Source of the DNA: Schmidtea nova
Taxonomy: Eukaryota
Length of the DNA stretch: 64,000 nucleotides
Direction of reading: 5' to 3'
Assembly: GCA_044892505.1 (NCBI GenBank)
Contig: CM097884.1
Location: 29,636,001 to 29,700,000, forward strand
The notes beneath the pieces were generated by a model. The model saw nothing but the letters and a program-made list of their open reading frames with translations. It was not told where the DNA came from and searched no databases. Made by a program: the position numbers and the translations under genes. Every line of letters begins with the position of its first letter. Position 1 is the stretch's first letter. Shown piece after piece: positions 6,868-64,000 of this stretch.

Positions 6868-6878
6868 TCACGGGGGAA

Positions 6879-12603: not shown

Positions 12604-12771
12604 ATTTAATTATAAGTGTAATAACCCAACAAACGTATCGAATTATGTATATCTTGCATTCACTATTAAGAATAACCCAATAAAAACAGGGTAAAAGTCA
12701 AATTTTACAAGAAACTTTGTCCGAACTTCTTGAATATGAAATTATAATTAAAGTGGGTGTATTAATAAGCA

Positions 12772-12776
<5 letters not shown>

Positions 12777-12850
<74 letters not shown>
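12777..12850. repeat. (TA)37 microsatellite
   Basis: Perfect TA dinucleotide run. Confidence 0.95.
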
Positions 12851-12854
<4 letters not shown>

Positions 12855-13466
12855 ATCATTTCTCCTTTTATAAATAATACATTGTTTTAAAATTTGTTTT
12901 CATCTAAATAAATTAATTATTTGATTAGATTTTTTGAATTACTAAGCGATGCAATGCAGCAAATGCATAATGAATAAATTGGATATAGTATTTGAACAAT
13001 GAAGATTTTGTAAACGCGGTTTCGATTTAAACTAATGACATTTTATAGACATTCATTTCTCTCTATCACACACATACACATAAATCAATCATCTCACGGA
13101 GGCACACGCACACACAGAATGCAGCAAATGAAAATATTCATAGCAATTAACAATCGATTGAATCATGCGTGTGTATTTTTGATCAAAATGACAATAGAAA
13201 GTAATTTATTGAGTAGGCCAAAAATTGAAGATGCACAACAAAAATAACAATAAACTTTGCTTAACACACTTTGTTAGCATAAAACCTAATTTCACATATC
13301 GTTTTGATCATTTAATTATAAAATTACTAATTCAATTATTTGAAACTTTGGATTTTTAATATTTTATATCAATTACGATTTTTCCAAGGTTAGAGAATTT
13401 TTTGAAGTTATCCATAATTATAATTATTTAAAAATAAAGAGTGTTAAACTGAGTTTATTTGCAAAA

Positions 13467-15204
13467 ATGGCTCTCGAGGACCCTCAAATCCGATTGGATT
13501 TTATTCAAGTAGTTAATTATAAAATTTGTTAGAAGTAAAATATTGGTTTCGTTTCAGTCAACAATTCAATCCATACCGTTTTCATCCTGCCACAGTGCCT
13601 TAATTTTAGAAAATAATAGACAAGCAACATTGAAAGCCGAATTAGAGGAAATTGAAAATTTCATTAAAACAACTGTATATATATATTTATTTATTTATTT
13701 AATTATTATTCTCTCACTATTAGAACGAGGCAAACTTATTAAACAGCGTTGGTGAAGTTGAAAAATTAAAAGTGGAAAAATAATGTTAAAAATTGCAAAA
13801 TTAGTTAATATTTTCTAATATTCAGGAAGAAATCAGTGCCAATCAAGAAGCTCTTGAATTTTATGATTCAATTTCATCTTTAGAAGAATTATTTTCCGTA
13901 AGTTTTCAATAAAAAATGACAGGAAATATTTCACAATAATTACAGCAAGTTACCACTCAAATAGCAGATCGGGCTCTGAAAGATTCTTTGATATCTACAA
14001 CAAAAGATTTCGAGTCCGATGTAAAAATATTTTCATTTAACATTAAAAAATAGTTTTTATAACTGCTTGATCTTCAGGTATCAGTCCCAAAAGTTAAACA
14101 ATGTTGGAATAGAATTCTTCACTACTCAGAATTGACATCTATTCACACAAAAGATGCTGCAGATTATCATCAAGTAATTCTTTTTTATTTCACATGCCAG
14201 TTCCTTTAAAATCATTTCATAATAAAAAAGACGACACTAGTTAACATCATAAGAAATTTTTAAAAAAATTTTATTATTAAAAATTTGACCCTTTCATGTT
14301 TAGTTTCTCCTAAAATATCAATTTCATTTATAAAAATTGTTTGATAATTTTTTTTATTAAATTTAAAAACTCAGTACAAAACTGCAACAGACAAATAATA
14401 ACAAAAATTTATAGTTCAAAGAAATCAAAACTTTTCTCTTTCTCACTTATTTCATCAACGTTGACAAAGGCATAAAGTACATTTTACCTTCATGCTGCAT
14501 CCAAGAGTTTGAAAAGTTTAAACTAACTCTTCATGACTTGAAGTGCTTTTATTTGTTGAAAATTTTTCTCTAGCTTTTTTGAACGATCTTCATGCAACCT
14601 TATTCTTGGCATTAATTAATTAATTAATAATGATAATAACTATAATTATAATTATAATTTAAATTAATATAGTTCTACCATGAATGCTCCGAAATTCGGC
14701 GATTGATTGAAAGGAGATGGCAATTGACAACCAAATTACTAAATCAACTAAATCTCAAAGGTGTCATGAAGGATGCTAAAGACATTATAAAAATCACAAA
14801 AGTATGAGCCTTAGTACGATTTTATGTTATCAATGCTTCCTATTAAAGGGAACGACGAATGAGCTTCATAGTTTGGCTGATCAAATAGCAAATCTTAAAC
14901 GACGATCAGCAAGCATTGTCCCAATTTACCTACGCACAAGTTCAATTGCCGAACAAGGCAGAAAAGCTTTTTTATTGGCGGATTTTAAAATTGGAGATTT
15001 ACAATTGAAAAAATCTGAACATGTAACCGTTTTGGACAATTGGGGAAAAGATGGATCAATCAGTAGCGATTCTAATATTTCAGGCTCAATTCCGAGTAGA
15101 ATCAATTGGTTGGTTGAAACTAAAAACGGAGATAAATTACTTATTCCATCGATTGCTCTTTGGATTCCAGGACCAGATTCAGAAACAAGTCTAGTATTGA
15201 ATGA
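13467..15204 (+). CDS. Plakin-domain exons 1-8 (spectrin repeats and SH3 insertion)
   Basis: Spliced product contains WNRILHYSELTSIHTKDAADYHQ|FYHECSE, resembling the plakin W..IL......HLKEN.AY.QFF.EA pattern. It also contains LADFKIGDLQLKKSEHVTVLDN...WLVETKNGDKLLIPSIALWIPGPDSE, resembling the plakin SH3 ALCDYK...VLEDN..W.V....VPSVC..IPPP. Six introns are 47-57 nt and one is about 500 nt. Confidence 0.8.
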
Positions 15205-18200
15205 GTAAGATATATTTTTTATTTTATCGCTGTTAGATAAATCAATGTCGTTCATATAGCTTGCTGAGATGGGAAATAAATATTTTTTTTTATTCAAATC
15301 AAAATAAATTTAGAAAAAATAGGAATAATGATAACAAAAACAATATCTATAATTCTAAAATTTTATAACTATATTTTTATTAGAAAATACATTATCAAAA
15401 ATGATAGTAAAAATAGTGACGAATATTATTATCTGGAAGGTAATTCGGCCTCAAAAGGCCGTGTGCGCTGCACACCTGCACACACATATCATCGGCTCTG
15501 AGAAAAGTTGACAATATAAATTTTGAAATTAACAACTAATCTACCATTGTTCAATATAAACTAGAGTACAATTAATATATTTTACAGCATATTCAATACT
15601 CATATTTACTGACAAATTGTAAGTGACTGTGGCTTTTCATTTTTAATAAAAATATAAAGTCAACAATTAATGTCGATTTGTCTGATAACAGAGATATTTA
15701 CGATATATATATTGTAATGCTTTAAATCAAACAATGAGATGACATTATTATTTTAAGACATTTTATTATTCATATGAATAATTTTCATAAATTTTTTTTG
15801 GGATTTTTGGTTGTCAAGTACACGATATTTTGGCACGGCTTTTATCAAGTGTGTATATCAAATCACACATGATAAAGGATGTGCCGGAATATCGTGTACT
15901 TAACAATCATAAAACCACACCCCCCCCCAAAAAACTTTGATCTATAATCATACAATAATAAAAATTATTGATATAAATAAAAAGAGGTCAAAGATGAAAC
16001 TTAAACATTATTATGGTTTTTATTATTCATCATTCAACTTTTTTACATTTTATTCTTTTGCTTATCTCCAAATGACATTTGATCAATTAATTTTAATTAA
16101 ACTTAGAACACAAATTTAAAATATTGACTCATTGTCATCTGTCAAAAATTAACAATATTAGGAAATAAATAATGAAGAGATAAAAGCTGTAAAAAATTAC
16201 ATTTGAGAAATGTTGAATTATTCAAATTTTTATTTAAATTTTTAAAATTAAAATTTTATTAATAATAATAATTATTAGAATTTAGAATTTGGCCCCATAA
16301 GTAAAACTTTGGGAACCTCTGGTTTAGATGGTGCTATCGCTGAATATGGACTTAAGAACTAACCTAATGGCTAGGGTAAATCGATACATTTTTAATTAGC
16401 TGGAACTGTATACAAAGTGTGTCAAGTCCCATAAGAGTTGGAGAATATAATGAATGAAGTATTTTACAAAGAGATCTAAAAATAAACAAATTATTCGTAT
16501 TTTAACCCTTTCAAAGGCAAAGGAAACTAAAAGTGATGTAAAACTCAAAGTTTATTAATAATAATTATATAGTTACAAATGATCATAAGAAAATAAAAAC
16601 ATAGAAATACTATAAATGTGTTCTCTTGTGGCTCAATATATGTCAGTAGTTGTACCAAAAGTAAAAATGATTACCGACAGCGTTACACTTAGATATTTTT
16701 ATTAGTTTAAAATGGTGTACAGTATATTGCCACCACCTTAGAAAGGGTTAACTAAATATTATGAACTTAATAAAACATTGCAGAATAGTGCTAAACATGC
16801 CCTTATTATCTATCTCTTGATAGCTAAACCTGTTTCAATTGTCAGTGAGAATTGTACAAATAATCTCCAAGAGATTTGAAGTGATGACGTCATTCACTCC
16901 AACATAAAAAGACATATCTACGAAATATGATTTTAAAAAATAATTAAAATATATATTTAAACAAGGGATACCTCTAACAATTTTTAAAATATGTTTTCTA
17001 AATAATTCCTGTTTTCTAAAAAGATAACCGATTATCGGTCATATTTTGAATTTTATAATATTATATTTTCCTGATCTCAATCACAAAATTTTAATGTAGA
17101 CTACAAAATCAACTGACTGCCACCTGGGAAGAATTGATTAAAATGTTACGAGAGGTTAACATAAATTTCTTTCAACGGTTATTCGGAAAAATTTTTTCCA
17201 AATCTGAATTTACTTGCAACAATAAAGAACTTTTCTCCAAATGGATTGCCAGTTCAAAAAGTCTCATTTCAACAGAAAATTCGAGTTCTACATTGGCGAA
17301 AAATTTCTTGCGGAATTTGAAAAGACTCGAAGAGGAGTTAAAAATTTGTGAAGGTAGATAATTTTAGAAGAAATTTAAAGATAAAATGTCGGTTTAGTTT
17401 CAGAATCATACAAAGGTTATAATTTAAGACAACAAGATCTGGTTTTACTTGACGAAATTATGGTCAAATTTATGGTTTTCTTTTGAATTTTATTATTTTT
17501 ATAAATTAATCAAAATAAATAGGTAATAGAAAGAATTCGCAGACCCGTAGAAATAAAGGATATGAATGACTTGAAAGAGGAATGGCAATCGACAATGGAG
17601 TCCAATTTAAGAGTAGTGAAAGCTTTGGGAATTTTACAGTAATCTTCATTTTATTTTGACGATATAATTTATTTAACCCTTCTATATTCAAATTTATTCA
17701 ACATTTTTCTGCATATTAATACTATTTCTTATTCAATTTTTATGAATATTATAGATCAAAATATTTTTTGGATAATTCGACAAAACCTTTATCAAGTGTG
17801 CAATTATGAAATGCACACACGATAAAGGTTGTGCCTAAATATCTTCTAACTAACAACCTAAACAAATTGTAATTCATAGTCATAGAATTATTGATTTTAT
17901 AAAAAGAAATCATAGGTGAAACCAAAAGATAATTATGATTATATAGATCAAATTTTTTTATAAAGTACACGAATTTTTGGAAAAGCCGTTTTCAAGTGTT
18001 CCCACAATTTATAAAATAGCTTTCAAAAAATATGAAAATTTCTGAAAAAGAAACGAAAAGATCAAAGATGAAATTCTCAATCTGTGACATAACTTCAAAA
18101 CACAAGGTTATTTTTGAATGGTTCACAAGTGATTTTTTTGTAAATTCATAATATAAGGATAAGGATTTATTTATTTATAAATTAATAAATAAATCATTTA

Positions 18201-21200
18201 AATCAATAATTTTCATATTAATAATTTTATGACTATAGGTCAAAAATTTTTTTATTGTTGTACGATATTTCGGCAGTCTTTATCAAGTGTATATTTCAAA
18301 ATGCACACTTGATAAAGGCTGTGCCAAAATTTTTGTTATCTAGTCATACAATTATTAATATGAAAATTATTTTAAATAAAGAGATCAAAGGTAAACCCAA
18401 AAAATAATTCTGATAATAAATAAATTATTTTAAAAATAGTTGTTAAAAATTATAATTTTTTTAGATTTATCTACCATTATAAATGACAGAATTGTGGTTT
18501 ATGAACCATAGTTTAATAAAAAGTACGATTATACACGCAAAATCTATATTCTAATAAATTAATTTATAAATAAATATACTTTATTATTGCCAAATTTATA
18601 AAATGATATTGAGACGAATAAATATTGCAAAATTTCATGAATTATAGGACAAAATTAAGGTTAAGAGGTGTTTGGAAGATATAAATTTGTTCATTCTTTC
18701 TAGACGAGATTAGTGGGATTCATCTTGGGGAATAATAATGAAGTTTGCAGAAATTTATTATTTACAAAGAAAATTGTTTAGTGGACTGTATAATATTACA
18801 AAGAAACCTAGAAAATATTTCCTTACAAATTTCTAAAACCGTCTTTACCATTCTTTATCTGTTTCGCATTTCATCAAATCCACTTTATTTTTTACTAATT
18901 TTAAAGTTTTAAAGAAAATTGCAAAATAAATTTTAAATAAAATTAACTATTATTATTAACTATATTTAAAATATCATACTTTACAAATTTAATTTAAACA
19001 ATTCTATAATAATAATTGCATAATAGAAAAATATTGTAAAATTTGAAATTTATTATTATTATAAAATTAAAATTAATTTAATATTTACTTTTATAGAGAA
19101 ATGCAACACAGAAATCAAGAAGAATTGAAATTCATTTTGGAACATGTCGAAATGTGGAAACAAGGAACTCTAAATGCATCAACTATGAAAGAGTTGCAAA
19201 AATTGAGACATGAATCACATTCACCAGAATTCATGTTTTCAATTGATACAAGGGATTACTGTCGATCTTCTTCCTCTTCATCATCTAGGAATGATGACTT
19301 CACTGAGTATCAAAATAAATTTAGTGAAACGAGACTTTACTGCGATTTTGAGGCTAACAATTACAATTCCTTCGATAAAATGTATAATGAAATGTTTGTA
19401 TCAACCGCTGACATTGAGAAAAATATGGAGTTGGAACCGTATATCAAGAAGTCAGATGAGGTGCAGTTGTACAAGTCAAGAAAGAAATTACAGCTAAAGC
19501 CATTTTGGGATGGAAGTAATCTAAAAATCACCTATTTTGAAGTTTCACCCCTAATTGATGGCTACTCTTCATCTGAAGATGAAAAAATGGAAGTAACTAA
19601 GGAAAGTACACAGCTTGAATGTTTCCCGGAAAATGAAGGAGATCAAATTCCTTTGGATACTAATATCGAACACAAGTATGAATTGGGGTATTTAAGTGTT
19701 TTAGATCAAGTAAAATTGCGTGGTCAAGAATTATCTTCAAAATCTCACGTCGAAATCAAACAAGAACTAGAAAGCAAACCATTGAGAGATTTAGTTCAAA
19801 CAAGTTTTGAAAGAGGTGAATTGCCGGTATTATTGAAAGAAATATATTCTTTTCTATCGAGAGCTACAACAGGAAGTCAGACAGAAAGATTAAGAAATAT
19901 TGAAACTATTACAATTAAAGATTTTGTTGAAGAAACTTACCAAAGAAGTGAGATCCCTGTTCTAATGAGAGAAATCAATTCTCTTTTATCCAAAGTCTCT
20001 CAGTCAAGTCAAGCAGATTTAGTTGAACGCACCATGAGCATTTCCATAAAAGAATTTGTGAAAGAAACTAACGAAAGAAATGAAATGCAAATTTTATTAA
20101 AAGAAATTAATTCGATTTTGACAAGATCTACAACTGGAATTCAAACCGAGAGAATAAGAAAAATAGAAACGTATTCTATAAAGGATTTCGTCAGAGAAAC
20201 TAAAGATCGAAACGAAATGGAAATATTGTTGAACGAAATATTTTCAAGTTTAACAAGAATTTCAACTGGAGTTCAGACTGAAAGAATTAGAAAAATAGAA
20301 ACATTGACCATAAAGGATTTTGTCAGTGAAACTAAAAATAGAAATGAAATGGAAATTTTATTAACTGAAATAAACTCAAATTTAACAAGAACGACACAAG
20401 GGATACAGACGGATAGAATAAGGAAAATTGAAACAATTTCTATTAAGGATTTTATCAAAGAGACAATTGAAAGAAATGAAATGCCAATTTTACTTACAGA
20501 AGTCAATAGCAGTTTATTGAAGTCCACGAAAATGATTCAAACGGATAGAATAAGGCAGATAGAAACTGTTTCAATTAAAGACTTAGTTACTGAAACAATA
20601 GAAAGAAATGAAATTCCTATGCTAATAAATGAAATAAATTCAAAAGTGATTCGATTAACTAAATTAACGCAAACAGAAGAAAGAAGACCCATAACATTCG
20701 CCGAGGTAAGAAATATCATAAGAAAAACAACGGGAAATATTACAACAGAAGATGTTAGAAATGAAATATTGAATACTCTAGCAGATCTAGAAAGTAGTTA
20801 CGAAATAAAAGAAAGTAAGGAAGAGTTGATACAAAGAATAATTAACTATGGAATGGAAAAAGAAATTCTAGAAGAGTTAAATAAAAATGATTCAAAAAAT
20901 TATGTGAAAAATTTAAAAGAAATAGAATTAATTGAGAATCGAACAAGCATCGAAATGCACGAGAGAATTCGATTTGAAAAAATACTCACAGAATATGAAA
21001 AGGAAAAACCATTATTAAAAGACTTTGGAATTAAAAGCACTGAAAAACTACAGTATACACATAATGATAAATTGCTCTCAACTGAAGAGATGGATATACT
21101 AGAAACAGAGACCTCAAAATTATTTAAATCGTTTCAACGAAAAGAAATAAAAGTTACTAAGGAAGACAAAACACAATATCTGAATTACCATGACAAATGT

Positions 21201-24200
21201 ACGGAATATAATTCTAAATTAGACGATATTTCCTTAGACAATGGCAACCCAATTGAAGAAAATTTCGATTTGGAAAAAGAACATATAAAAGACAGATTAG
21301 AATCAGAAAACGAATTTGATAAAAGCAGAAAGACTTTAGGCATTAACAAAGAAAGTCAAACGATTGGAGAAGAAAGTCAATTAGAAAAAGAAAAATTCAT
21401 CAAGATTGTTATGAAGGAAAATCAAGAAAATTATGAGGTAATATTTCTTAAATATAATAAATTATAATTAAAAAAGATTTAGAGAATAAATATTTAGAAA
21501 AATAATAAAATATAACGAAAATAATTATACAAAACATACTTAAAAGCAAATATTAAAAAAGAAAACTTTAAATTGATTTGAAATTAAAGAAAAAACACAT
21601 ATATATATGTGTGTGTGTGTGTTTTTCTTTTTTTCTTTAATTTCAAATCAATTTAATTTATATATATGTAAAAGAATCGAAATAAAAAATGAAATATTAT
21701 AAAAATGAAATAAAATAATTGTTTTGAATGATTTTTTTTAATATTTTATTACGCTTTTAAGAAAAAGAATATAACAATGAAATAAAATAAAAAATAAAAC
21801 AGAATCCACTGTAATTTAATAAAATTTTTGAAGCAAAAATTAGAAAAAAACAAAAAATAAAATAAAGAAAATTAACGAGTAAAGAAAATTAAATTGAAAA
21901 CTTTAATAAAATAGTAACTAAATATAATATACATCAACTAAATACGAAATAGCTGACCAATTCATGTAATTCCATCTTTGCTTAAAGTAAAATTGAGAAT
22001 AAAGTCAAAAAAAATAATTAATCTAAAAAATTATAAAATGTATTCAGGCATGGAAATTTTACTACATTTGTTTTATGGAAGGAAAGATTATTGATTAAAG
22101 AAAATCAAAAGATATTTATCACCATTTTGAAGTAATATTTTATCATATTTTACCAATAGAAAAACATTAGAACAACAAAATGTTGATTAAATTTAAGAAT
22201 ATAGTAAATTATTTCGTAACTTGATAATATAAAAATAACAAAGCATATGAAAAAAATTTACACAACGTCAATAAACTTTCACGTTTTCTTTGGATAAGAA
22301 ATTCGAAATATGTCACCTTGAAATATGATTGAGACGATATTCCTTTTTTACTTCAATGCGTGGTTTCTTGAATTTTCTAAATATTTTACGTTAAAATATA
22401 TAGTTTTTTAAAACTTTTTCTCCTACGACCAACTGATAATATATTAAAGAAGAGCTGGTTTCGATACCACTCTCAGCCCCATCAATAATTGCGGGTATGC
22501 CATCATATTAATTTTTGTAATTTAAAGTTTCTTTACCGGTGCCACTCTAACAAGCAATTTTCCAGCAAGTCAGATCTGACACTTTGACTTTTTTTCCACC
22601 GTGATTGATTAAATTACCCTGATAATTATTGAGATTCATTTTTTTGTATTCTATCTGCAGTACCTTAAAGGGAACCCAAATGAATTATACCACTTTATTT
22701 GTTATAAATTGTCAATTTGCCACCAATTGAAAGTTTTTATCTTAACCAAACATGATTTTTACATTTTTTGCAATATTAATTATTTTTTTATATTCTCTAT
22801 TTCTTTTTAATTTTGTGTGATAATGTATAAGTCCAATAAAATGATGATAATTTTACTTTTTCAACTTTATTAACTGATAATTAAATAAAATTGTATTTAT
22901 AAAAATATTTTGAAATCGACGTTACCTTAATTTGACAATATTGTGTTGCAAATCGTGAATACAAATAATATCTTACGTAAAAATTTGTTCAGCCAATGGG
23001 AATATAATTAAATTTGTTGTATCTAATGAAATATTTAAATGAAGATTATTGACTATAAAAATTCGATTTGCTTCTTTAAATGTTACAAATATGGGTTTTA
23101 ATAAAATAAAATTACACAGAGGTTGCCTTTGAGTTGCAAGTTCTTAAATAATTATTAAAATCGTAATAATAAAACAATAAAAACGAATTTTAAAATTTAT
23201 TAAAAGTAGTTAAATGAATATTAATGCTAATTTAAATGCAATCTTCAATTCAAATGTAAATCGTTTCATTAAATTCAGATTAAAACTGAAAACATTGCAG
23301 TGGAGTCGAATCTCCCTGAATTGGTGGAAACAATTTTGGAATATGAGACAAGAAAAAGAGATAAGTCAACAGAATTCCGAACTGACATGATTGAAATGAA
23401 GAGCGAATTTTCGAAAGACACTCAAATAGTTGAAATAGATATCGGAAGCGTTAAAGACCGAAGAGATTTTAGTAAATACGCTCAAAGTCAACTAATAGAA
23501 GTAGGAACTGAAACATACGGAGATAAACATGAAGTATTAGTGAATGTTTTAACGAGCTATGAAGTGAAGTCAAAGGTTATCAACACATTAACAGATTTTA
23601 AGTTCGAAATGGTAGACTGTTGGAATTTTTCAGATGGAAAATGCGAAGAAAAATTGTCAGAAATCGCAATTGAAAGTACAACTAAAACAGTAGACAGTTC
23701 TAGCGAATATACAATAAAACTAACTGAAGTTCAAGCTAATGAATCAAAAGAATACTTTGATATTAGTATGGAAACGTTGCTCGTTGAAGTTGTCAATGAA
23801 TCAACAAGTTGCGAAGTGATTTGTAAATCTATTGAATGTGAAAGAACAGAATTAGTAGAAGAAGAAATAGTTGCAAAGACTAGTGAAGAAGAAAGAGCTG
23901 ACGTAAAAATGACAGAAGATGAGTGCATAGCTAGTGAAAAAGTGATGAGAAATATTGGAACAACTGCAAAATGTTCGATGATTGACATGATTTCAAATAA
24001 AGAAATAGATTTCAGTGAAAGCAGTTACGAAACCGAATACAGAGAGACTTATGAAAATAAATTATTTGAAACTGAACAGAGGAAACTCAAGACAATGGTA
24101 GCGACATCTGAGATTAAGTCTTGTTCCATTGATATTCAATTCGAAAGTAAAATATTTGATGTTCTATCTGAAACTGGAATCGAGTTCAAATCTTTGGTGA

Positions 24201-54200: not shown

Positions 54201-57200
54201 AAGCAGTTTTGAATGCAAATCAATTGAAGAAACCTGGAGTCAAGTTGGTGCAAAGGCAGTTGAAGTTGGTTCAGAATTCAGAAGCGTGATTGTAGAATGT
54301 TCAAGTGAATATACAATTAGTATGAGAGAAAGTCAGGTAGACCAAGCAATAGCAACTGAAGAAGTCGGTGTAATGACAGTAGAATTAGTAGTGATAGATG
54401 AGTCATCGGTGTTTGAATTGAGGTGCTGCACAGTTGAATGTGAAACTGTAGAAATCGTAGAAGAAATAATTCCTTTAGAGGCAAAGGAAGAGGAATCAGA
54501 AAGATTGTTAATTGAGAATGAAAGTGTAAGCTGGGAGATTCCAATGCTAGATATTGCTACTACAACAGTTAAGCCGACATTAGAAGATATTAGCACAGAA
54601 AAAGTTATTGAGCATGTTGAATATAGTGGTGAATGGTGCCGAGAAATTAAGCATGAAAGTGAAATGTTTGAAACAGAGAAATCAGGTTACTCAACAACGA
54701 TCGTATCATCAGATGAAGACATTAAATATTGCTCAGTTGAAATACAATTCGAAGAAACAAAGTCTCGCAACATAGAATCTGGCTACGAAATCAAGTCAAC
54801 AATGAAAGAATGTTACAGCGAAACAGAGGTAAATAAAATGAATTCAGTTTTACAAAAAATGTCACTTAATCACTGCCTAAAATCTATTATGATGTCTTTA
54901 AAGATAAATACTGTTTTGAAACCTTTATCATAATCTTTTATTTTAAATTCATATTTTAACATAGTTTATTTGTTAACCTCTTCATTGCATTATTATTTCT
55001 TAGATTTATTAATTTACAAAATATTTCGAGTCATTTTTAGAACTGTTTTCTTGTGTTTAGATTAAATCTGAAAACATTGCAACTGAAACTGGAATAACAG
55101 AATTGATACATACGAGCTTGGAAAAAGATACAAAAGCTTCAAATAAGTTAACTGACTATAGAGCAGAGGCCATTGACATGAGCAGTGAATCATTCAAAGA
55201 TAGTGAAATTGTAGAAGTTTCTTTCGAAAAACTCAAAGACACAGCTGACTTCGGTAGTAGTGTAGAAAGTAAAATGATTGAAGTAGGAACAGAAACTTTC
55301 GGAGAAAAGCATAATGTATTCATCGATACGCTTACAAGTCATGAAGCTGAAATTAAATTCGAAGAAACATTGACTGAGTTCATGTGTGAGTCGGTAAATA
55401 GTGAAAGCAGTTTTGAATGCAAATCAATTGAAGAAACCTGGAGTCAAGTTGGTGCAAAGGCAGTTGAAGTTGGTTCAGAATTCAGAAGCGTGATTGTAGA
55501 ATGTTCAAGTGAATATACAATTAGTATGAGAGAAAGTCAGGTAGACCAAGCAATAGCAACTGAAGAAGTCGGTGTAATGACAGTAGAATTAGTAGTGATA
55601 GATGAGTCATCGGTGTTTGAATTGAGGTGCTGCACAGTTGAATGTGAAACTGTAGAAATCGTAGAAGAAATAATTCCTTTAGAGGCAAAGGAAGAGGAAT
55701 CAGAAAGATTGTTAATTGAGAATGAAAGTGTAAGCTGGGAGATTCCAATGCTAGATATTGCTACTACAACAGTTAAGCCGACATTAGAAGATATTAGCAC
55801 AGAAAATGTAATTGAGCATGTTGAATATAGTGGTGAATGGTGCCGAGAAATTAAGCATGAAAGTGAAATGTTTGAAACAGAGAAATCAGGTTACTCAACA
55901 ACGATCGTATCATCAGATGAAGACATTAAATATTGCTCAGTTGAAATACAATTCGAAGAAACAAAGTCTCGCAACATAGAATCTGGCTACGAAATCAAGT
56001 CAACAATGAAAGAATGTTACAGCGAAACAGAGGTAAATAAAATGAATTCAGTTTTACAAAAAATGTCACTTAATCACTGCCTAAAATCTATTATGATGTC
56101 TTTAAAGATAAATACTGTTTTGAAACCTTTATCATAATCTTTTATTTTAAATTCATATTTTAACATAGTTTATTTGTTAACCTCTTCATTGCATTATTAT
56201 TTCTTAGATTTATTAATTTACAAAATATTTCGAGTCATTTTTAGAACTGTTTTCTTGTGTTTAGATTAAATCTGAAAACATTGCAACTGAAACTGGAATA
56301 ACAGAATTGATACATACGAGCTTGGAAAAAGATACAAAAGCTTCAAATAAGTTAACTGACTATAGAGCAGAGGCCATTGACATGAGCAGTGAATCATTCA
56401 AAGATAGTGAAATTGTAGAAGTTTCTTTCGAAAAACTCAAAGACACAGCTGACTTCGGTAGTAGTGTAGAAAGTAAAATGATTGAAGTAGGAACAGAAAC
56501 TTTCGGAGAAAAGCATAATGTATTCATCGATACGCTTACAAGTCATGAAGCTGAAATTAAATTCGAAGAAACATTGACTGAGTTCATGTGTGAGTCGGTA
56601 AATAGTGAAAGCAGTTTTGAATGCAAATCAATTGAAGAAACCTGGAGTCAAGTTGGTGCAAAGGCAGTTGAAGTTGGTACAGAATTCAGAAGCGTGATTG
56701 TAGAATGTTCAAGTGAATATACAATTAGTATGAGAGAAAGTCAGGTAGACCAAGCAATAGCAACTGAAGAAGTCGGTGTAATGACAGTAGAATTAGTAGT
56801 GATAGATGAGTCATCGGTGTTTGAATTGAGGTGCTGCACAGTTGAATGTGAAACTGTAGAAATCGTAGAAGAAATAATTCCTTTAGAGGCAAAGGAAGAG
56901 GAATCAGAAAGATTGTTAATTGAGAATGAAAGTGTAAGCTGGGAGATTCCAATGCTAGATATTGCTACTACAACAGTTAAGCCGACATTAGAAGATATTA
57001 GCACAGAAAATGTAATTGAGCATGTTGAATATAGTGGTGAATGGTGCCGAGAAATTAAGCATGAAAGTGAAATGTTTGAAACAGAGAAATCAGGTTACTC
57101 AACAACGATCGTATCATCAGATGAAGACATTAAATATTGCTCAGTTGAAATACAATTCGAAGAAACAAAGTCTCGCAACATAGAATCTGGCTACGAAATC

Positions 57201-60200
57201 AAGTCAACAATGAAAGAATGTTACAGCGAAACAGAGGTAAATAAAATGAATTCAGTTTTACAAAAAATGTCACTTAATCACTGCCTAAAATCTATTATGA
57301 TGTCTTTAAAGATAAATACTGTTTTGAAACCTTTATCATAATCTTTTATTTTAAATTCATATTTTAACATAGTTTATTTGTTAACCTCTTCATTGCATTA
57401 TTATTTCTTAGATTTATTAATTTACAAAATATTTCGAGTCATTTTTAGAACTGTTTTCTTGTGTTTAGATTAAATCTGAAAACATTGCAACTGAAACTGG
57501 AATAACAGAATTGATACATACGAGCTTGGAAAAAGATACAAAAGCTTCAAATAAGTTAACTGACTATAGAGCAGAGGCCATTGACATGAGCAGTGAATCA
57601 TTCAAAGATAGTGAAATTGTAGAAGTTTCTTTCGAAAAACTCAAAGACACAGCTGACTTCGGTAGTAGTGTAGAAAGTAAAATGATTGAAGTAGGAACAG
57701 AAACTTTCGGAGAAAAGCATAATGTATTCATCGATACGCTTACAAGTCATGAAGCTGAAATTAAATTCGAAGAAACATTGACTGAGTTCATGTGTGAGTC
57801 GGTAAATAGTGAAAGCAGTTTTGAATGCAAATCAATTGAAGAAACCTGGAGTCAAGTTGGTGCAAAGGCAGTTGAAGTTGGTTCAGAATTCAGAAGCGTG
57901 ATTGTAGAATGTTCAAGTGAATATACAATTAGTATGAGAGAAAGTCAGGTAGACCAAGCAATAGCAACTGAAGACGTCGGTGTAATGACAGTAGAATTAG
58001 TAGTGATAGATGAGTCATCGGTGTTTGAATTGAGGTGCTGCACAGTTGAATGTGAAACTGTAGAAATTGTAGAAGAAATAATTCCTTTAGAGGCAAAGGA
58101 AGAGGAATCAGAAAGATTGTTAATTGAGAATGAAAGTGTAAGCTGGGAGATTCCAATGCTAGATATTGCTACTACAACAGTTAAGCCGACATTAGAAGAT
58201 ATTACCACAGAAAAAGTTATTGAGCATGTTGAATATAGTGGTGAATGGTGCCGAGAAATTAAGCATGAAAGTGAAATGTTTGAAACAGAGAAATCAGGTT
58301 ACTCAACAACGATCGTATCATCAGATGAAGACATTAAATATTGCTCAGTTGAAATACAATTCGAAGAAACAAAGTCTCGCAACATAGAATCTGGCTACGA
58401 AATCAAGTCAACAATGAAAGAATGTTACAGCGAAACAGAGGTAAATAAAATGAATTCAGTTTTACAAAAAATGTCACTTAATCACTGCCTAAAATCTATT
58501 ATGATGTCTTTAAAGATAAATACTGTTTTGAAACCTTTATCATAATCTTTTATTTTAAATTCATATTTTAACATAGTTTATTTGTTAACCTCTTCATTGC
58601 ATTATTATTTCTTAGATTTATTAATTTACAAAATATTTCGAGTCATTTTTAGAACTGTTTTCTTGTGTTTAGATTAAATCTGAAAACATTGCAACTGAAA
58701 CTGGAATAACAGAATTGATACATACGAGCTTGGAAAAAGATACAAAAGCTTCAAATAAGTTAACTGACTATAGAGCAGAGGCCATTGACATGAGCAGTGA
58801 ATCATTCAAAGATAGTGAAATTGTAGAAGTTTCTTTCGAAAAACTCAAAGACACAGCTGACTTCGGTAGTAGTGTAGAAAGTAAAATGATTGAAGTAGGA
58901 ACAGAAACTTTCGGAGAAAAGCATAATGTATTCATCGATACGCTTACAAGTCATGAAGCTGAAATTAAATTCGAAGAAACATTGACTGAGTTCATGTGTG
59001 AGTCGGTAAATAGTGAAAGCAGTTTTGAATGCAAATCAATTGAAGAAACCTGGAGTCAAGTTGGTGCAAAGGCAGTTGAAGTTGGTTCAGAATTCAGAAG
59101 CGTGATTGTAGAATGTTCAAGTGAATATACAATTAGTATGAGAGAAAGTCAGGTAGACCAAGCAATAGCAACTGAAGAAGTCGGTGTAATGACAGTAGAA
59201 TTAGTAGTGATAGATGAGTCATCGGTGTTTGAATTGAGGTGCTGCACAGTTGAATGTGAAACTGTAGAAATCGTAGAAGAAATAATTCCTTTAGAGGCAA
59301 AGGAAGAGGAATCAGAAAGATTGTTAATTGAGAATGAAAGTGTAAGCTGGGAGATTCCAATGCTAGATATTGCTACTACAACAGTTAAGCCGACATTAGA
59401 AGATATTAGCACAGAAAATGTAATTGAGCATGTTGAATATAGTGGTGAATGGTGCCGAGAAATTAAGCATGAAAGTGAAATGTTTGAAACAGAGAAATCA
59501 GGTTACTCAACAACGATCGTATCATCAGATGAAGACATTAAATATTGCTCAGTTGAAATACAATTCGAAGAAACAAAGTCTCGCAACATAGAATCTGGCT
59601 ACGAAATCAAGTCAACAATGAAAGAATGTTACAGCGAAACAGAGGTAAATAAAATGAATTCATTTTTACAAATAATGTCACTTAATCACTGCCTAAAATC
59701 TATTATGATGTCTTTAAAGATAAATACTGTTTTGAAACCTTTATCATAATCTTTTATTTTAAATTCATATTTTAACATAGTTTATTTGTTAACCTCTTCA
59801 TTGCATTATTATTTCTTAGATTTATTAATTTACAAAATATTTCGAGTCATTTTTAGAACTGTTTTCTTGTGTTTAGATTAAATCTGAAAACATTGCAACT
59901 GAAACTGGAATAACAGAATTGATACATACGAGCTTGGAAAAAGATACAAAAGCTTCAAATAAGTTAACTGACTATAGAGCAGAGGCCATTGACATGAGCA
60001 GTGAATCATTCAAAGATAGTGAAATTGTAGAAGTTTCTTTCGAAAAACTCAAAGACACAGCTGACTTCGGTAGTAGTGTAGAAAGTAAAATGATTGAAGT
60101 AGGAACAGAAACTTTCGGAGAAAAGCATAATGTATTCATCGATACGCTTACAAGTCATGAAGCTGAAATTAAATTCGAAGAAACATTGACTGAGTTCATG

Positions 60201-63200
60201 TGTGAGTCGGTAAATAGTGAAAGCAGTTTTGAATGCAAATCAATTGAAGAAACCTGGAGTCAAGTTGGTGCAAAGGCAGTTGAAGTTGGTTCAGAATTCA
60301 GAAGCGTGATTGTAGAATGTTCAAGTGAATATACAATTAGTATGAGAGAAAGTCAGGTAGACCAAGCAATAGCAACTGAAGACGTCGGTGTAATGACAGT
60401 AGAATTAGTAGTGATAGATGAGTCATTGGTGTTTGAATTGAGGTGCTGCACAGTTGAATGTGAAACTGTAGAAATTGTAGAAGAAATAATTCCTTTAGAG
60501 GCAAAGGAAGAGGAATCAGAAAGATTGTTAATTGAGAATGAAAGTGTAAGCTGGGAGATTCCAATGCTAGATATTGCTACTACAACAGTTAAGCCGACAT
60601 TAGAAGATATTACCACAGAAAAAGTTATTGAGCATGTTGAATATAGTGGTGAATGGTGCCGAGAAATTAAGCATGAAAGTGAAATGTTTGAAACAGAGAA
60701 ATCAGGTTACTCAACAACGATCGTATCATCAGATGAAGACATTAAATATTGCTCAGTTGAAATACAATTCGAAGAAACAAAGTCTCGCAACATAGAATCT
60801 GGCTACGAAATCAAGTCAACAATGAAAGAATGTTACAGCGAAACAGAGGTAAATAAAATGAATTCAGTTTTACAAAAAATGTCACTTAATCACTGCCTAA
60901 AATCTATTATGATGTCTTTAAAGATAAATACTGTTTTGAAACCTTTATCATAATCTTTTATTTTAAATTCATATTTTAACATAGTTTATTTGTTAACCTC
61001 TTCATTGCATTATTATTTCTTAGATTTATTAATTTACAAAATATTTCGAGTCATTTTTAGAACTGTTTTCTTGTGTTTAGATTAAATCTGAAAACATTGC
61101 AACTGAAACTGGAATAACAGAATTGATACATACGAGCTTGGAAAAAGATACAAAAGCTTCAAATAAGTTAACTGACTATAGAGCAGAGGCCATTGACATG
61201 AGCAGTGAATCATTCAAAGATAGTGAAATTGTAGAAGTTTCTTTCGAAAAACTCAAAGACACAGCTGACTTCGGTAGTAGTGTAGAAAGTAAAATGATTG
61301 AAGTAGGAACAGAAACTTTCGGAGAAAAGCATAATGTATTCATCGATACGCTTACAAGTCATGAAGCTGAAATTAAATTCGAAGAAACATTGACTGAGTT
61401 CATGTGTGAGTCGGTAAATAGTGAAAGCAGTTTTGAATGCAAATCAATTGAAGAAACCTGGAGTCAAGTTGGTGCAAAGGCAGTTGAAGTTGGTTCAGAA
61501 TTCAGAAGCGTGATTGTAGAATGTTCAAGTGAATATACAATTAGTATGAGAGAAAGTCAGGTAGACCAAGCAATAGCAACTGAAGAAGTCGGTGTAATGA
61601 CAGTAGAATTAGTAGTGATAGATGAGTCATCGGTGTTTGAATTGAGGTGCTGCACAGTTGAATGTGAAACTGTAGAAATCGTAGAAGAAATAATTCCTTT
61701 AGAGGCAAAGGAAGAGGAATCAGAAAGATTGTTAATTGAGAATGAAAGTGTAAGCTGGGAGATTCCAATGCTAGATATTGCTACTACAACAGTTAAGCCG
61801 ACATTAGAAGATATTAGCACAGAAAATGTAATTGAGCATGTTGAATATAGTGGTGAATGGTGCCGAGAAATTAAGCATGAAAGTGAAATGTTTGAAACAG
61901 AGAAATCAGGTTACTCAACAACGATCGTATCATCAGATGAAGACATTAAATATTGCTCAGTTGAAATACAATTCGAAGAAACAAAGTCTCGCAACATAGA
62001 ATCTGGCTACGAAATCAAGTCAACAATGAAAGAATGTTACAGCGAAACAGAGGTAAATAAAATGAATTCATTTTTACAAATAATGTCACTTAATCACTGC
62101 CTAAAATCTATTATGATGTCTTTAAAGATAAATACTGTTTTGAAACCTTTATCATAATCTTTTATTTTAAATTCATATTTTAACATAGTTTATTTGTTAA
62201 CCTCTTCATTGCATTATTATTTCTTAGATTTATTAATTTACAAAATATTTCGAGTCATTTTTAGAACTGTTTTCTTGTGTTTAGATTAAATCTGAAAACA
62301 TTGCAACTGAAACTGGAATAACAGAATTGATACATACGAGCTTGGAAAAAGATACAAAAGCTTCAAATAAGTTAACTGACTATAGAGCAGAGGCCATTGA
62401 CATGAGCAGTGAATCATTCAAAGATAGTGAAATTGTAGAAGTTTCTTTCGAAAAACTCAAAGACACAGCTGACTTCGGTAGTAGTGTAGAAAGTAAAATG
62501 ATTGAAGTAGGAACAGAAACTTTCGGAGAAAAGCATAATGTATTCATCGATACGCTTACAAGTCATGAAGCTGAAATTAAATTCGAAGAAACATTGACTG
62601 AGTTCATGTGTGAGTCGGTAAATAGTGAAAGCAGTTTTGAATGCAAATCAATTGAAGAAACCTGGAGTCAAGTTGGTGCAAAGGCAGTTGAAGTTGGTTC
62701 AGAATTCAGAAGCGTGATTGTAGAATGTTCAAGTGAATATACAATTAGTATGAGAGAAAGTCAGGTAGACCAAGCAATAGCAACTGAAGAAGTCGGTGTA
62801 ATGACAGTAGAATTAGTAGTGATAGATGAGTCATCGGTGTTTGAATTGAGGTGCTGCACAGTTGAATGTGAAACTGTAGAAATCGTAGAAGAAATAATTC
62901 CTTTAGAGGCAAAGGAAGAGGAATCAGAAAGATTGTTAATTGAGAATGAAAGTGTAAGCTGGGAGATTCCAATGCTAGATATTGCTACTACAACAGTTAA
63001 GCCGACATTAGAAGATATTAGCACAGAAAATGTAATTGAGCATGTTGAATATAGTGGTGAATGGTGCCGAGAAATTAAGCATGAAAGTGAAATGTTTGAA
63101 ACAGAGAAATCAGGTTACTCAACAACGATCGTATCATCAGATGAAGACATTAAATATTGCTCAGTTGAAATACAATTCGAAGAAACAAAGTCTCGCAACA

Positions 63201-64000
63201 TAGAATCTGGCTACGAAATCAAGTCAACAATGAAAGAATGTTACAGCGAAACAGAGGTAAATAAAATGAATTCAGTTTTACAAAAAATGTCACTTAATCA
63301 CTGCCTAAAATCTATTATGATGTCTTTAAAGATAAATACTGTTTTGAAACCTTTATCATAATCTTTTATTTTAAATTCATATTTTAACATAGTTTATTTG
63401 TTAACCTCTTTATTGCATTATTATTTCTTAGATTTATTAATTTACAAAATATTTCGAGTCATTTTTAGAACTGTTTTCTTGTGTTTAGATTAAATCTGAA
63501 AACATTGCAACTGAAACTGGAATAACAGAATTGATACATACGAGCTTGGAAAAAGATACAAAAGCTTCAAATAAGTTAACTGACTATAGAGCAGAGGCCA
63601 TTGACATGAGCAGTGAATCATTCAAAGATAGTGAAATTGTAGAAGTTTCTTTCGAAAAACTCAAAGACACAGCTGACTTCGGTAGTAGTGTAGAAAGTAA
63701 AATGATTGAAGTAGGAACAGAAACTTTCGGAGAAAAGCATAATGTATTCATCGATACGCTTACAAGTCATGAAGCTGAAATTAAATTCGAAGAAACATTG
63801 ACTGAGTTCATGTGTGAGTCGGTAAATAGTGAAAGCAGTTTTGAATGCAAATCAATTGAAGAAACCTGGAGTCAAGTTGGTGCAAAGGCAGTTGAAGTTG
63901 GTTCAGAATTCAGAAGCGTGATTGTAGAATGTTCAAGTGAATATACAATTAGTATGAGAGAAAGTCAGGTAGACCAAGCAATAGCAACTGAAGAAGTCGG
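13467..64000 (+). CDS. Giant multi-exon plakin-family (spectrin-repeat + SH3) gene with tandem exon arrays; 3' end beyond the window, 5' end unresolved
   Basis: Manually inferred GT-AG exons, all joining in frame: 13467-13508, 13558-13674, 13724-13771, 13826-13897, 13946-14020, 14078-14173, 14673-14801, 14849-15204, 17100-17353, 17404-17462, 17523-17638, 19097-21437, then 3 x 945-nt and 28 x 972-nt exons. Phase-1 and phase-2 junctions (15204/17100, 17353/17404, 17638/19097) match reciprocally. About 11,250 aa through the 28th large exon. Confidence 0.75.
15446..15500. mobile_element. Isolated hAT-like terminal fragment
   Basis: GC-rich GGCCGTGTGCGCTGCACACCTGCACAC...TCGGCTCTG resembles a hAT right end. 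No partner end or TSD found. Confidence 0.35.
15811..15906. repeat. Foldback (palindromic) repeat, copy 1
   Basis: AAGTACACGATATT / AATATCGTGTACTT, GGCAC / GTGCC, CTTTATCA / TGATAAAG and GTGTG / CACAC nested inverted pairs. Confidence 0.75.
16506..16747. mobile_element. piggyBac-like MITE (242 bp)
   Basis: TTAA|CCCTTTCAAAGG ... CCTTAGAAAGGG|TTAA: TIRs match at 11 of 12 positions, with TTAA on both sides. Confidence 0.75.
17100..17638 (+). CDS. Three exons continuing the plakin helical region
   Basis: 17100-17353 (ELQNQLTATWEELIKML...), 17404-17462 and 17523-17638 (VIERIRRPVEIKDMNDLKEEWQ...). Introns of 50 and 60 nt; the donor at 17463 could alternatively be 17475 (same phase). Confidence 0.7.
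17770..17845. repeat. Foldback repeat, copy 2
   Basis: AACCTTTATC..GTGTGCA / TGCACAC..GATAAAGGTT; same core as the copies at 15.8 and 18.3 kb. Confidence 0.7.
18205..18371. repeat. Foldback repeat, copy 3 (longest arms, MITE-like)
   Basis: AATAATTTTCATATTAATAATT / AATTATTAATATGAAAATTATT outer arms; CTTTATCAAGTGT / ACACTTGATAAAG inner stem. Confidence 0.75.
19097..21437 (+). CDS. 2341-nt exon: end of helical region, acidic linker, 7 x 44-aa repeats, Glu/Lys-rich segment
   Basis: Acceptor TTTATAG at 19096 and donor GAG|GTAATA at 21437/21438. Covers most of the 788-aa track ORF 19101-21467. Confidence 0.8.
19755..20678 (+). repeat. Coding tandem repeat, 7 x 132 bp (44 aa)
   Basis: Units such as RIRKIETYSIKDFVRETKDRNEMEILLNEIFSSLTRISTGVQTE end at 19886, 20018, 20150, 20282, 20414, 20546 and 20678. 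Confidence 0.9.
21568..21656. repeat. Intronic inverted repeat with (AT)n(GT)n loop
   Basis: TTAAATTGATTTGAAATTAAAGAA / TTCTTTAATTTCAAATCAATTTAA, perfect 24-bp arms. Confidence 0.75.
23279..27487 (+). CDS. Type-A tandem exons: 3 x 945 nt (315 aa), phase 0-0, identical protein sequence
   Basis: Exons 23279-24223, 24910-25854 and 26543-27487. Acceptor AAATTCAG|ATT AAA ACT; donor TTT GAG|GTAAAC. Confidence 0.8.
28175..28564 (+). pseudogene. Broken fourth type-A exon (intact acceptor, frameshift/stop, donor deleted); pseudo-exon or alternative last exon
   Basis: Matches copies 1-3 up to about 28551, then a short deletion gives TAA at 28562-28564. The sequence then jumps to intron-like AAAAACCATATCTTTTGCATGT. 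Confidence 0.7.
29680..64000 (+). repeat. Type-B tandem array, period exactly 1204 bp, at least 28.5 copies, continues past the window end
   Basis: Track ORFs recur every 1204 bp from 29819 to 62327. Copies differ only by scattered substitutions. Confidence 0.98.
29777..64000 (+). CDS. Type-B tandem exons: 28 complete x 972 nt (324 aa) + 1 partial, phase 0-0
   Basis: Exon starts at 29777 + 1204n (29777, 30981, 32185 ... 61081, 62285, 63489). Acceptor TTCTTGTGTTTAG|ATT AAA; donor ACA GAG|GTAAAT; 232-nt introns. No stop or frameshift in any complete exon copy. Confidence 0.8.

What the first reader, a model, noticed from the sequence alone, without database searches (positions are those of the whole stretch)
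13467..64000. Giant plakin-family gene built from a tandem array of about 1-kb exons (more than 11,000 aa in this window)
Seen: each 1204-bp unit contains a clean AG acceptor 42 nt upstream of the track ORF and a GT donor 105 nt before its end. This defines a 972-nt, frame-preserving exon and a 232-nt intron. Upstream small exons splice in frame into a plakin-like spectrin-repeat/SH3 region. Known: plakins are cytolinkers whose rods are usually coiled coil, spectrin repeats or plakin repeat domains. Inference: this plakin head is fused to an extreme acidic Glu/Ser/Thr/Val/Ile-rich polymer (only 3 Pro and 9 Cys per type-B unit, so not titin-PEVK-like), a titin-scale architecture I do not recognise in any plakin.
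Basis: partly seen in the sequence, partly recalled or inferred. Interest (0 to 1): 0.88.

Follow-up and report, generated by a model that had tools for sequence, protein, structure and literature searches.

The report
Giant gene from near-identical repeated exons
An AT-rich animal genome holds a real protein-coding gene of more than 11,000 codons, made mostly of 28 almost identical exon-plus-intron cassettes that encode a new, very acidic, probably unfolded repeat; a short plakin-type head probably sits at its front.

Summary
From 29777 to the window end there are 28 full units and one partial unit of exactly 1204 bp, 99.6% identical. Each holds a 972-nt phase-0/0 exon (TTTAG|ATT...GAG|GTAAAT) and a 232-nt intron. 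Three 1632-bp type-A units (945-nt exons) and a truncated fourth precede them.

A 42-exon model from ATG 13467 reads 11,384 codons without a stop. The exons are coding: type A against type B gives dN/dS of about 0.18, the introns cannot be aligned, and single-exon homologues stay open in other organisms.

Two database proteins from a relative (P0015, P0001) carry the predicted junctions. Their provenance is unknown, and no RNA data were available.

Exons 1-7 of the head are conserved with the same splice sites on a contig from a related species. The SH3 exon passes Pfam SH3_10 (plakin type). Spectrin repeats were not shown. There is no CH domain and no plakin repeat.

The head is linked to the repeat part only by reading frame, so two separate genes remain possible. 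The repeat unit matches no known family and gives very low AlphaFold2 confidence.

Verdict: a new variant of the giant cytoskeletal linker kind. The scan noted a similar in-phase exon array elsewhere in this genome (s1-364178, untested).

The parts
13467..13508 (+). Exon 1, with the start codon (MALEDP...).
   Evidence: ATG and the following codons are conserved in L003. There an in-frame stop lies 24 nt upstream, and a GT donor sits at the same place.
13558..13674 (+). Exon 2 (39 codons, phase 0/0).
   Evidence: 64% aa identity to L003:985-1101, with AG/GT at the same places.
13826..13897 (+). Exon 3 (24 codons).
   Evidence: 92% aa identity to L003:1252-1323.
13946..14020 (+). Exon 4 (25 codons).
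   Evidence: 72% aa identity to L003:1408-1482.
14078..14173 (+). Exon 5 (32 codons). It looks helical and spectrin-like, with a W.
   Evidence: 84% aa identity to L003:1539-1634.
14673..14801 (+). Exon 6 (43 codons).
   Evidence: 74% aa identity to L003:1690-1818. In L003 this exon is fused to the SH3 exon with no intron, which confirms the join.
14849..15204 (+). Exon 7: plakin-type SH3 domain with an insertion of about 20 aa. It ends in phase 2.
   Evidence: Pfam SH3_10 at E 2.9e-7, 30.9 bits against cut-off 22.8. Orthologues P0016-P0018 are 64-73% identical and also carry SH3_10. Desmoplakin 3r6n and plectin 3pe0 appear among the top five PDB profile hits at E of about 0.4.
17100..17353 (+). 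Exon 8 (predicted). It completes the GA| codon of exon 7, looks helical, and ends in phase 1.
   Evidence: Read from the sequence, with canonical AG/GT. No homologue was found.
17530..17638 (+). Exon 9 (predicted, phase 1 to 2).
   Evidence: Read from the sequence. It is in frame between exon 8 and acceptor 19096|19097. There is no comparative support.
19097..21437 (+). 2.3-kb exon (780 codons). Its acceptor is ttttatag|AGAAATG and its donor is GAG|gtaata.
   Evidence: 788-aa ORF. It is 73% identical and colinear with P0015, which continues directly into a type-A unit at ENYE|IKTEN.
19794..20717 (+). Seven repeats of 44 aa inside the big exon. Five carry a [TVI]QT core (GIQTE, GVQTE, MIQTD, LTQTE), which makes them candidate LC8/DYNLL-binding sites.
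   Evidence: Tandem Repeats Finder gives period 132. The register and motif count are 6 observed against 0.56 expected.
23279..27487 (+). Three type-A units. The exons are 23279-24223, 24910-25854 and 26543-27487 (315 codons each, phase 0/0), with introns of about 687 nt.
   Evidence: The three proteins are identical and the DNA is 99.8% identical. Type A is 38% aa identical to type B.
28175..28564 (+). Truncated fourth type-A exon (pseudo-exon). It is identical to type A for 376 nt, then degraded, with an in-frame stop and no donor.
29777..64000 (+). Type-B array: 28 full 1204-bp units (972-nt exon plus 232-nt intron) and a partial 29th unit cut by the window end.
   Evidence: One unit is 85% identical to P0001:141-464, where units are joined at ...SEIE|IKSEN....

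Best explanation
This is one very large protein-coding gene on the + strand. It starts at ATG 13467 and runs off the window.

**Shown**
- The 1204-bp and 1632-bp tandem units are exon-intron cassettes. Their exons are all phase 0/0 and encode a conserved repeat of about 320 aa, one repeat per exon.
- The repeat belongs to a small, lineage-restricted family with no known domain.
- It is extremely acidic (net -51 per type-B unit) and gives very low AlphaFold2 confidence.
- The type-B array is young or homogenised by unequal crossing-over: it is 99.6% identical, neighbouring units share variants, and the variation inside it looks neutral.
- The N-terminal exons encode a plakin-type SH3 flanked by helical-looking sequence, and exons 1-7 are conserved in a related species.

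**Inferred**
- The head of about 417 aa splices through exons 8 and 9 into the 2.3-kb exon, then into the A and B exons. This gives a protein of at least 11,400 aa.
- The head anchors the protein to a junctional or cytoskeletal partner.
- The seven 44-aa repeats with TQT-type motifs, and the motif-rich C-terminal tail seen in the relative, recruit LC8 dimers that pair two chains.
- The polyanionic repeat region acts as a long, extensible, self-repelling spacer or spring.
- Its length can change through copy number, and through exon skipping, which never breaks the frame.
For: **Array anatomy and open frame.** (42 exons, 11,384 codons, 0 stops).

**Coding selection between types A and B.**
- dN is 0.54 and dS is 2.9.
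- Identity by codon position is 0.58, 0.65 and 0.41.
- The exons align at 157 against 35 for shuffles; the introns score 27 against 28.
- There are 0 in-frame stops against 34 and 48 off-frame.
- Exon GC is 0.36 and intron GC is 0.21.

**Family.** Eight true hits turned up in 1.84 billion representative proteins. Six of them (P0002, P0004-P0008) are about one unit long and end at the donor site; P0003 is a partial unit.

**Junctions.** P0015 joins the big exon to a type-A unit at the predicted site. P0001 joins two B-like units at the predicted site and adds a unique 539-aa tail.

**Head.**
- SH3_10 is above the cut-off in the window and in two orthologues.
- Exons 1-7, the ATG and the splice sites are conserved in L003, and the exon 6-7 intron is absent there.
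- The nearest protein-language-model clusters carry SH3_10 plus Spectrin, at 0.84, which is lead level only.

**Link to the repeats.** Both exon 8 to 9 to 19097 and exon 8 to 19099 are in frame.

**LC8 idea.** [TVI]QT occurs 6 times against 0.56 expected in the big exon, and 5 times against 0.51 in the non-repetitive tail of P0001.

**Disorder.** AlphaFold2 pLDDT is 34.7 from the single sequence and 30.5 with 12 sequences.
Against: - No RNA evidence was available. P0001 and P0015 may be ab initio models, which would use the same GT/AG logic.
- P0015 starts at the Met 4 nt after the acceptor at 19097. The repeat gene could therefore start there, for example by trans-splicing. However, the same source also starts P0001 at an internal Met.
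- Exons 8 and 9 have no comparative support.
- No Spectrin hit was obtained for any single exon.
- Variation inside the type-B array looks neutral. There are 5 synonymous and 29 non-synonymous variants against 6.6 synonymous expected, and 0 stops against 2.0 expected. It therefore cannot show that all 28 exons are used.
- The truncated fourth type-A exon carries a stop.
- A low pLDDT from a 12-sequence alignment does not prove disorder.
- LC8 binding is inferred from a short motif only.
Confidence: 0.68

Rival explanations
1. There are two genes. One is a small plakin-like protein of about 420 aa (exons 1-9). The other is a giant repeat protein that starts at Met 19101. The acceptor just upstream of that Met would then serve a 5'-UTR intron or spliced-leader trans-splicing.
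For: - P0015 begins at exactly this Met.
- The acceptor lies only 4 nt before the ATG, a layout typical of trans-spliced genes. That point is general knowledge and was not tested here.
- If the exon 9 donor is not used, the frame stops at once (...GILQ, then TAA).
- Frame compatibility alone has a chance probability of about one in three, and I had a choice of acceptors.
Against: - P0001, from the same source, also starts at an internal Met in mid-unit, so that annotation trims models to the first Met.
- A head ending at exon 9 would stop partway through a helical segment. The sequence continues in the same style into the first 45 or so residues of the big exon. This comes from reading and is an inference.
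- All exons lie on the same strand, and nothing that looks like a terminal exon lies between them.
Confidence: 0.22
2. The type-B array is mainly a young satellite made by amplifying an exon-intron cassette of an older, smaller gene. Most copies would be skipped or not expressed, so the real protein is much shorter than 11,000 aa.
For: - Units are 99.6% identical, introns included, and the variants look neutral.
- The cluster holds a truncated pseudo-exon.
- The relative's model has only about 1.5 units.
- Another in-phase exon array is noted elsewhere in this genome (s1-364178, untested).
Against: - All 28 copies keep the frame, the acceptor and the donor, with no indels.
- The 1.5 units in the relative could reflect a collapsed repeat in an older assembly. 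This is an inference.
- C. elegans ANC-1 shows that near-identical giant repeats can be expressed and functional (PMC8139857).
Confidence: 0.1

Closest known systems
Plakins and spectraplakins (plectin, desmoplakin, BPAG1/MACF1, Shot, VAB-10)
   Same: The SH3 is of the plakin type (Pfam SH3_10) and sits inside helical, spectrin-like sequence near the N-terminus of a giant protein. Desmoplakin and plectin plakin-domain structures are the only related PDB hits, and both are sub-threshold.
   Different: The head is only about 420 aa and starts at a conserved Met. No CH, plakin repeat, GAR or EF-hand domain and no coiled-coil rod was found. The body is a new acidic repeat that gives very low AlphaFold2 confidence and so may be disordered, not a helical rod. 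The definition of the plakin domain is taken from PMC5979291.
C. elegans ANC-1 (nesprin-1/2 orthologue)
   Same: It is a giant cytoskeletal linker whose body is a tandem array of very long repeats, six of 903 aa, almost 100% identical at the nucleotide level (PMC8139857).
   Different: ANC-1 has CH and KASH domains and helical, spectrin-like repeats. Here there is no CH domain, the relative's tail has no Pfam domain, each repeat is one exon, and the repeats are acidic with very low AlphaFold2 confidence.
Titin PEVK / poly-E spring segments
   Same: The body is a long, Glu-rich region with very low AlphaFold2 confidence, built from many short in-phase exons that can be skipped without a frameshift. 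The comparison rests on general knowledge of titin.
   Different: Only 3 Pro occur per 324 aa, units are 324 aa rather than about 28 aa, there are no flanking Ig or Fn3 domains, and there is no sequence similarity.
Multivalent LC8 (DYNLL) clients such as ASCIZ and KANK1
   Same: There is a regular ladder of TQT-type motifs. The relative's tail carries five more. The multivalent LC8 ladder concept is from PMC5963919 and PMC12803091.
   Different: Binding is untested. The repeats here are 44 aa long and include a helical-looking part. The motif count is not independent, because the sites are copies of one repeat.

Membership tests
Plakin family | An SH3 domain of the plakin type (Pfam PF17902 SH3_10). 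| tested here: met
   30.9 bits against cut-off 22.8 in the window. The orthologous L003 and P0017 score 33.6 and 32.8 bits. No SH3_1 or SH3_2 hit was reported.
Plakin family | A plakin domain: pairs of spectrin repeats flanking the SH3 (PMC5979291). | tested here: inconclusive
   - No Pfam Spectrin hit for any single exon.
- The PDB profile hits to desmoplakin 3r6n and plectin 3pe0 reach only E of about 0.4.
- The nearest protein-language-model clusters carry Spectrin plus SH3_10, at 0.84.
- The spliced head has no reference, so it could not be submitted whole.
Plakin family | Other plakin modules: CH actin-binding domain, plakin repeat domain, coiled-coil rod, GAR/EF-hand. | tested here: not met
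   - No such Pfam hit in any exon, or in P0001 and P0015.
- The start codon is conserved with an upstream stop in L003, so there is no room for a CH domain.
- The C-terminus of this gene itself lies outside the window.
Nesprin / ANC-1 type giant KASH proteins | N-terminal CH domains and a C-terminal KASH transmembrane tail. | tested here: not met
   There is no CH domain. The relative's C-terminal tail (P0001) has no Pfam domain, and its last residues are acidic rather than hydrophobic.
Titin-like PEVK spring | A composition dominated by Pro, Glu, Val and Lys, with flanking Ig/Fn3 domains. | tested here: not met
   A type-B unit has 3 Pro in 324 aa; Glu, Ser, Thr, Ile and Val dominate. There are no Ig or Fn3 hits.
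Multivalent LC8 client | Several TQT-type anchor motifs in flexible sequence. | tested here: inconclusive
   The motif is enriched: 6 against 0.56 expected in the big exon, and 5 against 0.51 in the tail of P0001. Binding cannot be tested with these tools.

The most novel reading that the evidence does not exclude
This would be an undescribed class of giant cytolinker. A mechanosensitive plakin-type SH3/spectrin head and an LC8-zipped ladder are fused to a polyanionic, disordered spring of more than 9,000 aa. The spring is encoded by a concertedly evolving array of in-phase exon-intron cassettes. The length of the protein would then be set by array copy number and exon skipping.
Probability: 0.3. 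Interest if true: 0.72.

Novelty: new variant of a known kind. Interest (0 to 1): 0.55.

Why it matters
If it is expressed as one molecule, this would be among the largest animal proteins (at least 11,400 aa, net charge about -1,570 in this window alone). It would join a plakin-type head to a repeat family that has no known relatives.

It is also a clean natural example of a gene growing by tandem amplification of an exon-intron cassette while always keeping the frame.

That makes testable how such arrays are spliced, how they are kept homogeneous, and whether copy number tunes a mechanical or spacing function.

The organism appears to be a planarian-like flatworm. This is an inference, not shown. 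RNAi and in situ hybridisation are routine in such animals.

Tried and rejected
- **PDB, single sequence.** phmmer of the SH3 exon against PDB sequences found nothing related. A profile of four orthologues gave only sub-threshold plakin hits.
- **Pfam on single exons.** The small exons, the big exon, the A and B units, P0001 and P0015 gave nothing except SH3_10.
- **AlphaFold2 of the type-B unit.** Confidence was too low to search folds, both alone and with a 12-sequence alignment: pLDDT 34.7 and 30.5.
- **ESM Atlas.** No usable hit for the type-B unit.
- **Exon 8 homologues.** None found.
- **Metagenome scan with the unit profile.** It returned only the two contigs already known.
- **Homologue contigs.** L002 carries a single unit with flanks of about 475 nt and no neighbouring exon. 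L001 is a chimeric scaffold with bacterial genes.
- **P0009.** A 472-aa repeat protein at E 5e-5 matches only a short 'DVLTSH' word. I treat it as chance.
- **Selection inside the type-B array.** Uninformative, because the variants look neutral.
- **tRNA scan.** No tRNA genes in the window.
- **Organism.** Not identified. A planarian is suspected from several features: AT-richness, introns of 47-57 nt, a genome piece of at least 159 Mb, giant Gypsy elements noted elsewhere in the genome, and UniParc-only relatives.
Full report
**1. What is in the window**

The window is AT-rich, with GC of 0.24-0.37, and it is eukaryotic.

The first 12.6 kb is transposon debris:
- a 1216-aa non-LTR reverse-transcriptase ORF;
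- an LTR-element RT/RNase H/integrase fragment;
- a MULE/SWIM element with a nested hAT fragment, bounded by inverted arrays of a TGGTCAGAAT motif.

From 13467 onward everything of interest lies on the + strand.

**2. The observation**

Autocorrelation gives 99.65% identity at lag 1204 between 30 kb and 64 kb, and a period of about 1632 bp between 23 kb and 30 kb. Tandem Repeats Finder cannot see periods above 500.

There are 28 complete 1204-bp units from 29777 and a 512-nt partial unit at the window end.

For the ORF 31023-32057, the exon begins at 30981 after ...ttcttgtgtttag and ends at 31952 before gtaaat. That gives 972 nt (324 codons, phase 0/0) and a 232-nt intron.

Type-A units have 945-nt exons (23279-24223 and two more) behind ...aaattcag and before gtaaac. 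The three copies are 99.8% identical with their introns and encode identical proteins.

A fourth type-A copy (28175-28564) is identical for 376 nt. It then degrades, hits a stop and has lost its donor. The frame stays open only if it is skipped.

**3. Are the units coding exons?**

Yes. Four lines of evidence agree.
- *Divergence pattern.* Types A and B are 38% identical in protein. In the codon alignment, identity is 0.58, 0.65 and 0.41 at positions 1, 2 and 3. dN is 0.54 and dS is 2.9.
- *Exons versus introns.* The exons align far above shuffles (157 against 35). The introns do not (27 against 28).
- *Stops.* The coding frame has 0 stops, against 34 and 48 in the other frames.
- *Base composition.* Exon GC is 0.36 and intron GC is 0.21.

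A profile of the units, searched against 1.84 billion representative proteins, found only eight true relatives.
- Six of them (P0002, P0004-P0008) are single-unit ORFs of about 330-350 aa from short metagenome or SRA contigs. P0003 is a partial unit of 242 aa. They are 33-55% identical to type B.
- The single-unit ORFs start at the unit start, end at the donor position and then read a few codons into the intron.
- So 'one unit equals one exon' holds across several organisms.

Variation inside the type-B array cannot add to this. There are 34 variable exon sites (5 synonymous and 29 non-synonymous, against 6.6 synonymous expected under neutrality). There are 0 stops against 2.0 expected, 8 variable intron sites and no indels. 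Neighbouring units share variants. That pattern fits a real array evolving by unequal exchange rather than an assembly artefact.

**4. Junctions**

Two UniParc-only proteins from a relative carry the predicted junctions.
- P0015 (836 aa) is 73% identical and colinear with the 788-aa ORF. It then runs straight into a type-A-like unit at ...ENYE|IKTEN..., which is exactly the donor at 21437 joined to the acceptor at 23279.
- P0001 (1003 aa) holds a partial unit and a full B-like unit (85% identical) joined at ...SEIE|IKSEN.... A unique 539-aa tail follows.

Their provenance is unknown. If they are ab initio models, they are independent predictions rather than RNA evidence.

**5. The head**

I read nine exons from the sequence: 13467-13508, 13558-13674, 13826-13897, 13946-14020, 14078-14173, 14673-14801, 14849-15204, 17100-17353 and 17530-17638.

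A 2273-bp contig from another organism (L003, GC 0.37), found through the SH3 exon, supports the first seven.
- It carries exons 1-7 in the same order, at 64-92% aa identity.
- GT/AG sites sit at the same positions.
- Conservation is limited to the exons.
- The ATG is conserved, with an in-frame stop 24 nt upstream.
- Exons 6 and 7 are fused there without an intron.

This confirms the head model up to the SH3 exon. It also shows that the protein starts there, so there is no CH domain.

The SH3 exon passes Pfam SH3_10, the plakin SH3 family, in the window and in two orthologues. A four-sequence profile puts desmoplakin 3r6n and plectin 3pe0 in the top five PDB hits, but only at E of about 0.4. 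The nearest protein-language-model clusters carry SH3_10 plus Spectrin (0.84, lead level only).

No Spectrin hit was obtained for any exon. The spliced head could not be submitted, because it has no reference.

**6. The link between the head and the repeats**

Exon 7 ends in phase 2, and exon 8 completes that codon. Exon 8 ends in phase 1.

Two routes keep the frame:
- exon 9 (phase 1 to 2) followed by the strong acceptor ttttatag|A at 19097;
- a direct join from exon 8 to the AG two bases later, at 19099.

The full 42-exon model has 11,384 codons and no stop.

This is the weakest step.
- Exons 8 and 9 have no homologue in the databases.
- Frame compatibility is cheap evidence.
- P0015 starts at the Met at 19101. 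P0001 also starts at an internal Met, so that annotation seems to trim models to the first Met, and the start of P0015 says little.
- The helical-looking sequence runs without a break from exon 9 into the first 45 or so residues of the big exon. This is a reading and an inference.

I put the fusion at roughly 70%.

**7. What the parts look like**

- *Type-B unit.* It has 65 Glu, 41 Ser, 30 Thr, 28 Ile, 27 Val, 3 Pro and 9 Cys. Net charge is -51 and pI is 4.2. The whole model has a net charge of -1,569.
- *Fold.* AlphaFold2 gives pLDDT 34.7 from the single sequence and 30.5 with a 12-sequence alignment. The ESM Atlas gives nothing. The unit keeps short invariant motifs across the family, such as D-F, V-G and G at fixed positions. 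The most economical reading is an intrinsically disordered polyanion with conserved short motifs, but a shallow alignment cannot prove disorder.
- *Big exon.* It holds seven 44-aa repeats. Five carry a [TVI]QT core. The relative's non-repetitive tail has five more, against 0.5 expected. These look like LC8/DYNLL anchors. Multivalent LC8 clients are known to form paired ladders or rods (PMC5963919, PMC12803091). I only counted motifs.

**8. Mechanism proposed**

*Shown:* a giant in-phase exon array that encodes a conserved acidic repeat, and a plakin-type SH3 head upstream.

*Inferred:* the head anchors the protein, LC8 pairs two chains at the ladder and at the tail, and the acidic body acts as a long extensible spacer or spring. 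Its length would be set by copy number and by exon skipping that preserves the frame.

**9. Comparison with known systems**

It is not a canonical plakin or spectraplakin. It has only the SH3 signature and lacks the CH, plakin repeat, GAR and rod modules (definition from PMC5979291).

Its architecture most resembles C. elegans ANC-1, whose body is six 903-aa repeats almost 100% identical at the nucleotide level (PMC8139857). It lacks the CH and KASH domains, and its repeats do not look helical.

It is not PEVK-like in composition.

I file it as a new variant of the giant cytolinker kind, with a new repeat family.

**10. Context**

The genome piece is at least 159 Mb long. Earlier notes report giant Gypsy elements and another in-phase exon array elsewhere in this genome (s1-364178; untested).

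Together with the 47-57-nt introns and the AT-richness, this suggests a planarian-like flatworm (literature lead). That is not shown.

Noticed in passing
window:837-4487 (+): An intact 1216-aa non-LTR retrotransposon ORF (Pfam RVT_1, E 5e-30). Its C-terminal part carries a Cys-rich motif and a sequence that resembles a restriction-like endonuclease. Tandem 62-bp and 39-bp repeats lie just upstream, at 12-576. No tRNA gene is in the window, unlike the tRNA-targeting RLE elements noted elsewhere in this genome.
   Followed up: partly
window:4834-6528 (+): A broken LTR-retroelement pol region, split over several frames: RT fragment, DUF7047 plus an RNase H-like domain, and the integrase core.
   Followed up: partly
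window:8247-12613: A DNA transposon of about 4.3 kb, bounded by inverted arrays of a TGGTCAGAAT-type subrepeat (8247-8400 and 12457-12613). It carries MULE transposase and SWIM zinc-finger fragments, with a hAT dimerisation-domain fragment nested inside.
   Followed up: partly
window:15800-15920, 17760-17860, 17950-18010, 18250-18350: Four copies of a short element sit in the long introns of the gene. Each has an internal hairpin-like core (...atcaagtgt...cacac(g/t)tgataaagg(a/c/t)tgtgcc...). It is probably a MITE or SINE family.
   Followed up: no
L003:1690-2172 against window:14673-15204: The 47-nt intron between exons 6 and 7 is absent in the related species (L003). In a third species it is present as a 45-nt in-frame stretch (P0017). 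This is a small case of intron loss or gain among close relatives.
   Followed up: partly
P0001:465-1003 (relative; not in the window): The unique C-terminal tail after the last repeat has no Pfam domain. It holds five [TVI]QT motifs against 0.5 expected. The corresponding part of this gene must lie beyond the window end.
   Followed up: partly
L001 (ENA scaffold, 4966 bp): A metagenome scaffold joins a eukaryotic repeat-unit exon to bacterial genes (Wzy_C, polysaccharide deacetylase). It is most likely a chimeric assembly.
   Followed up: no
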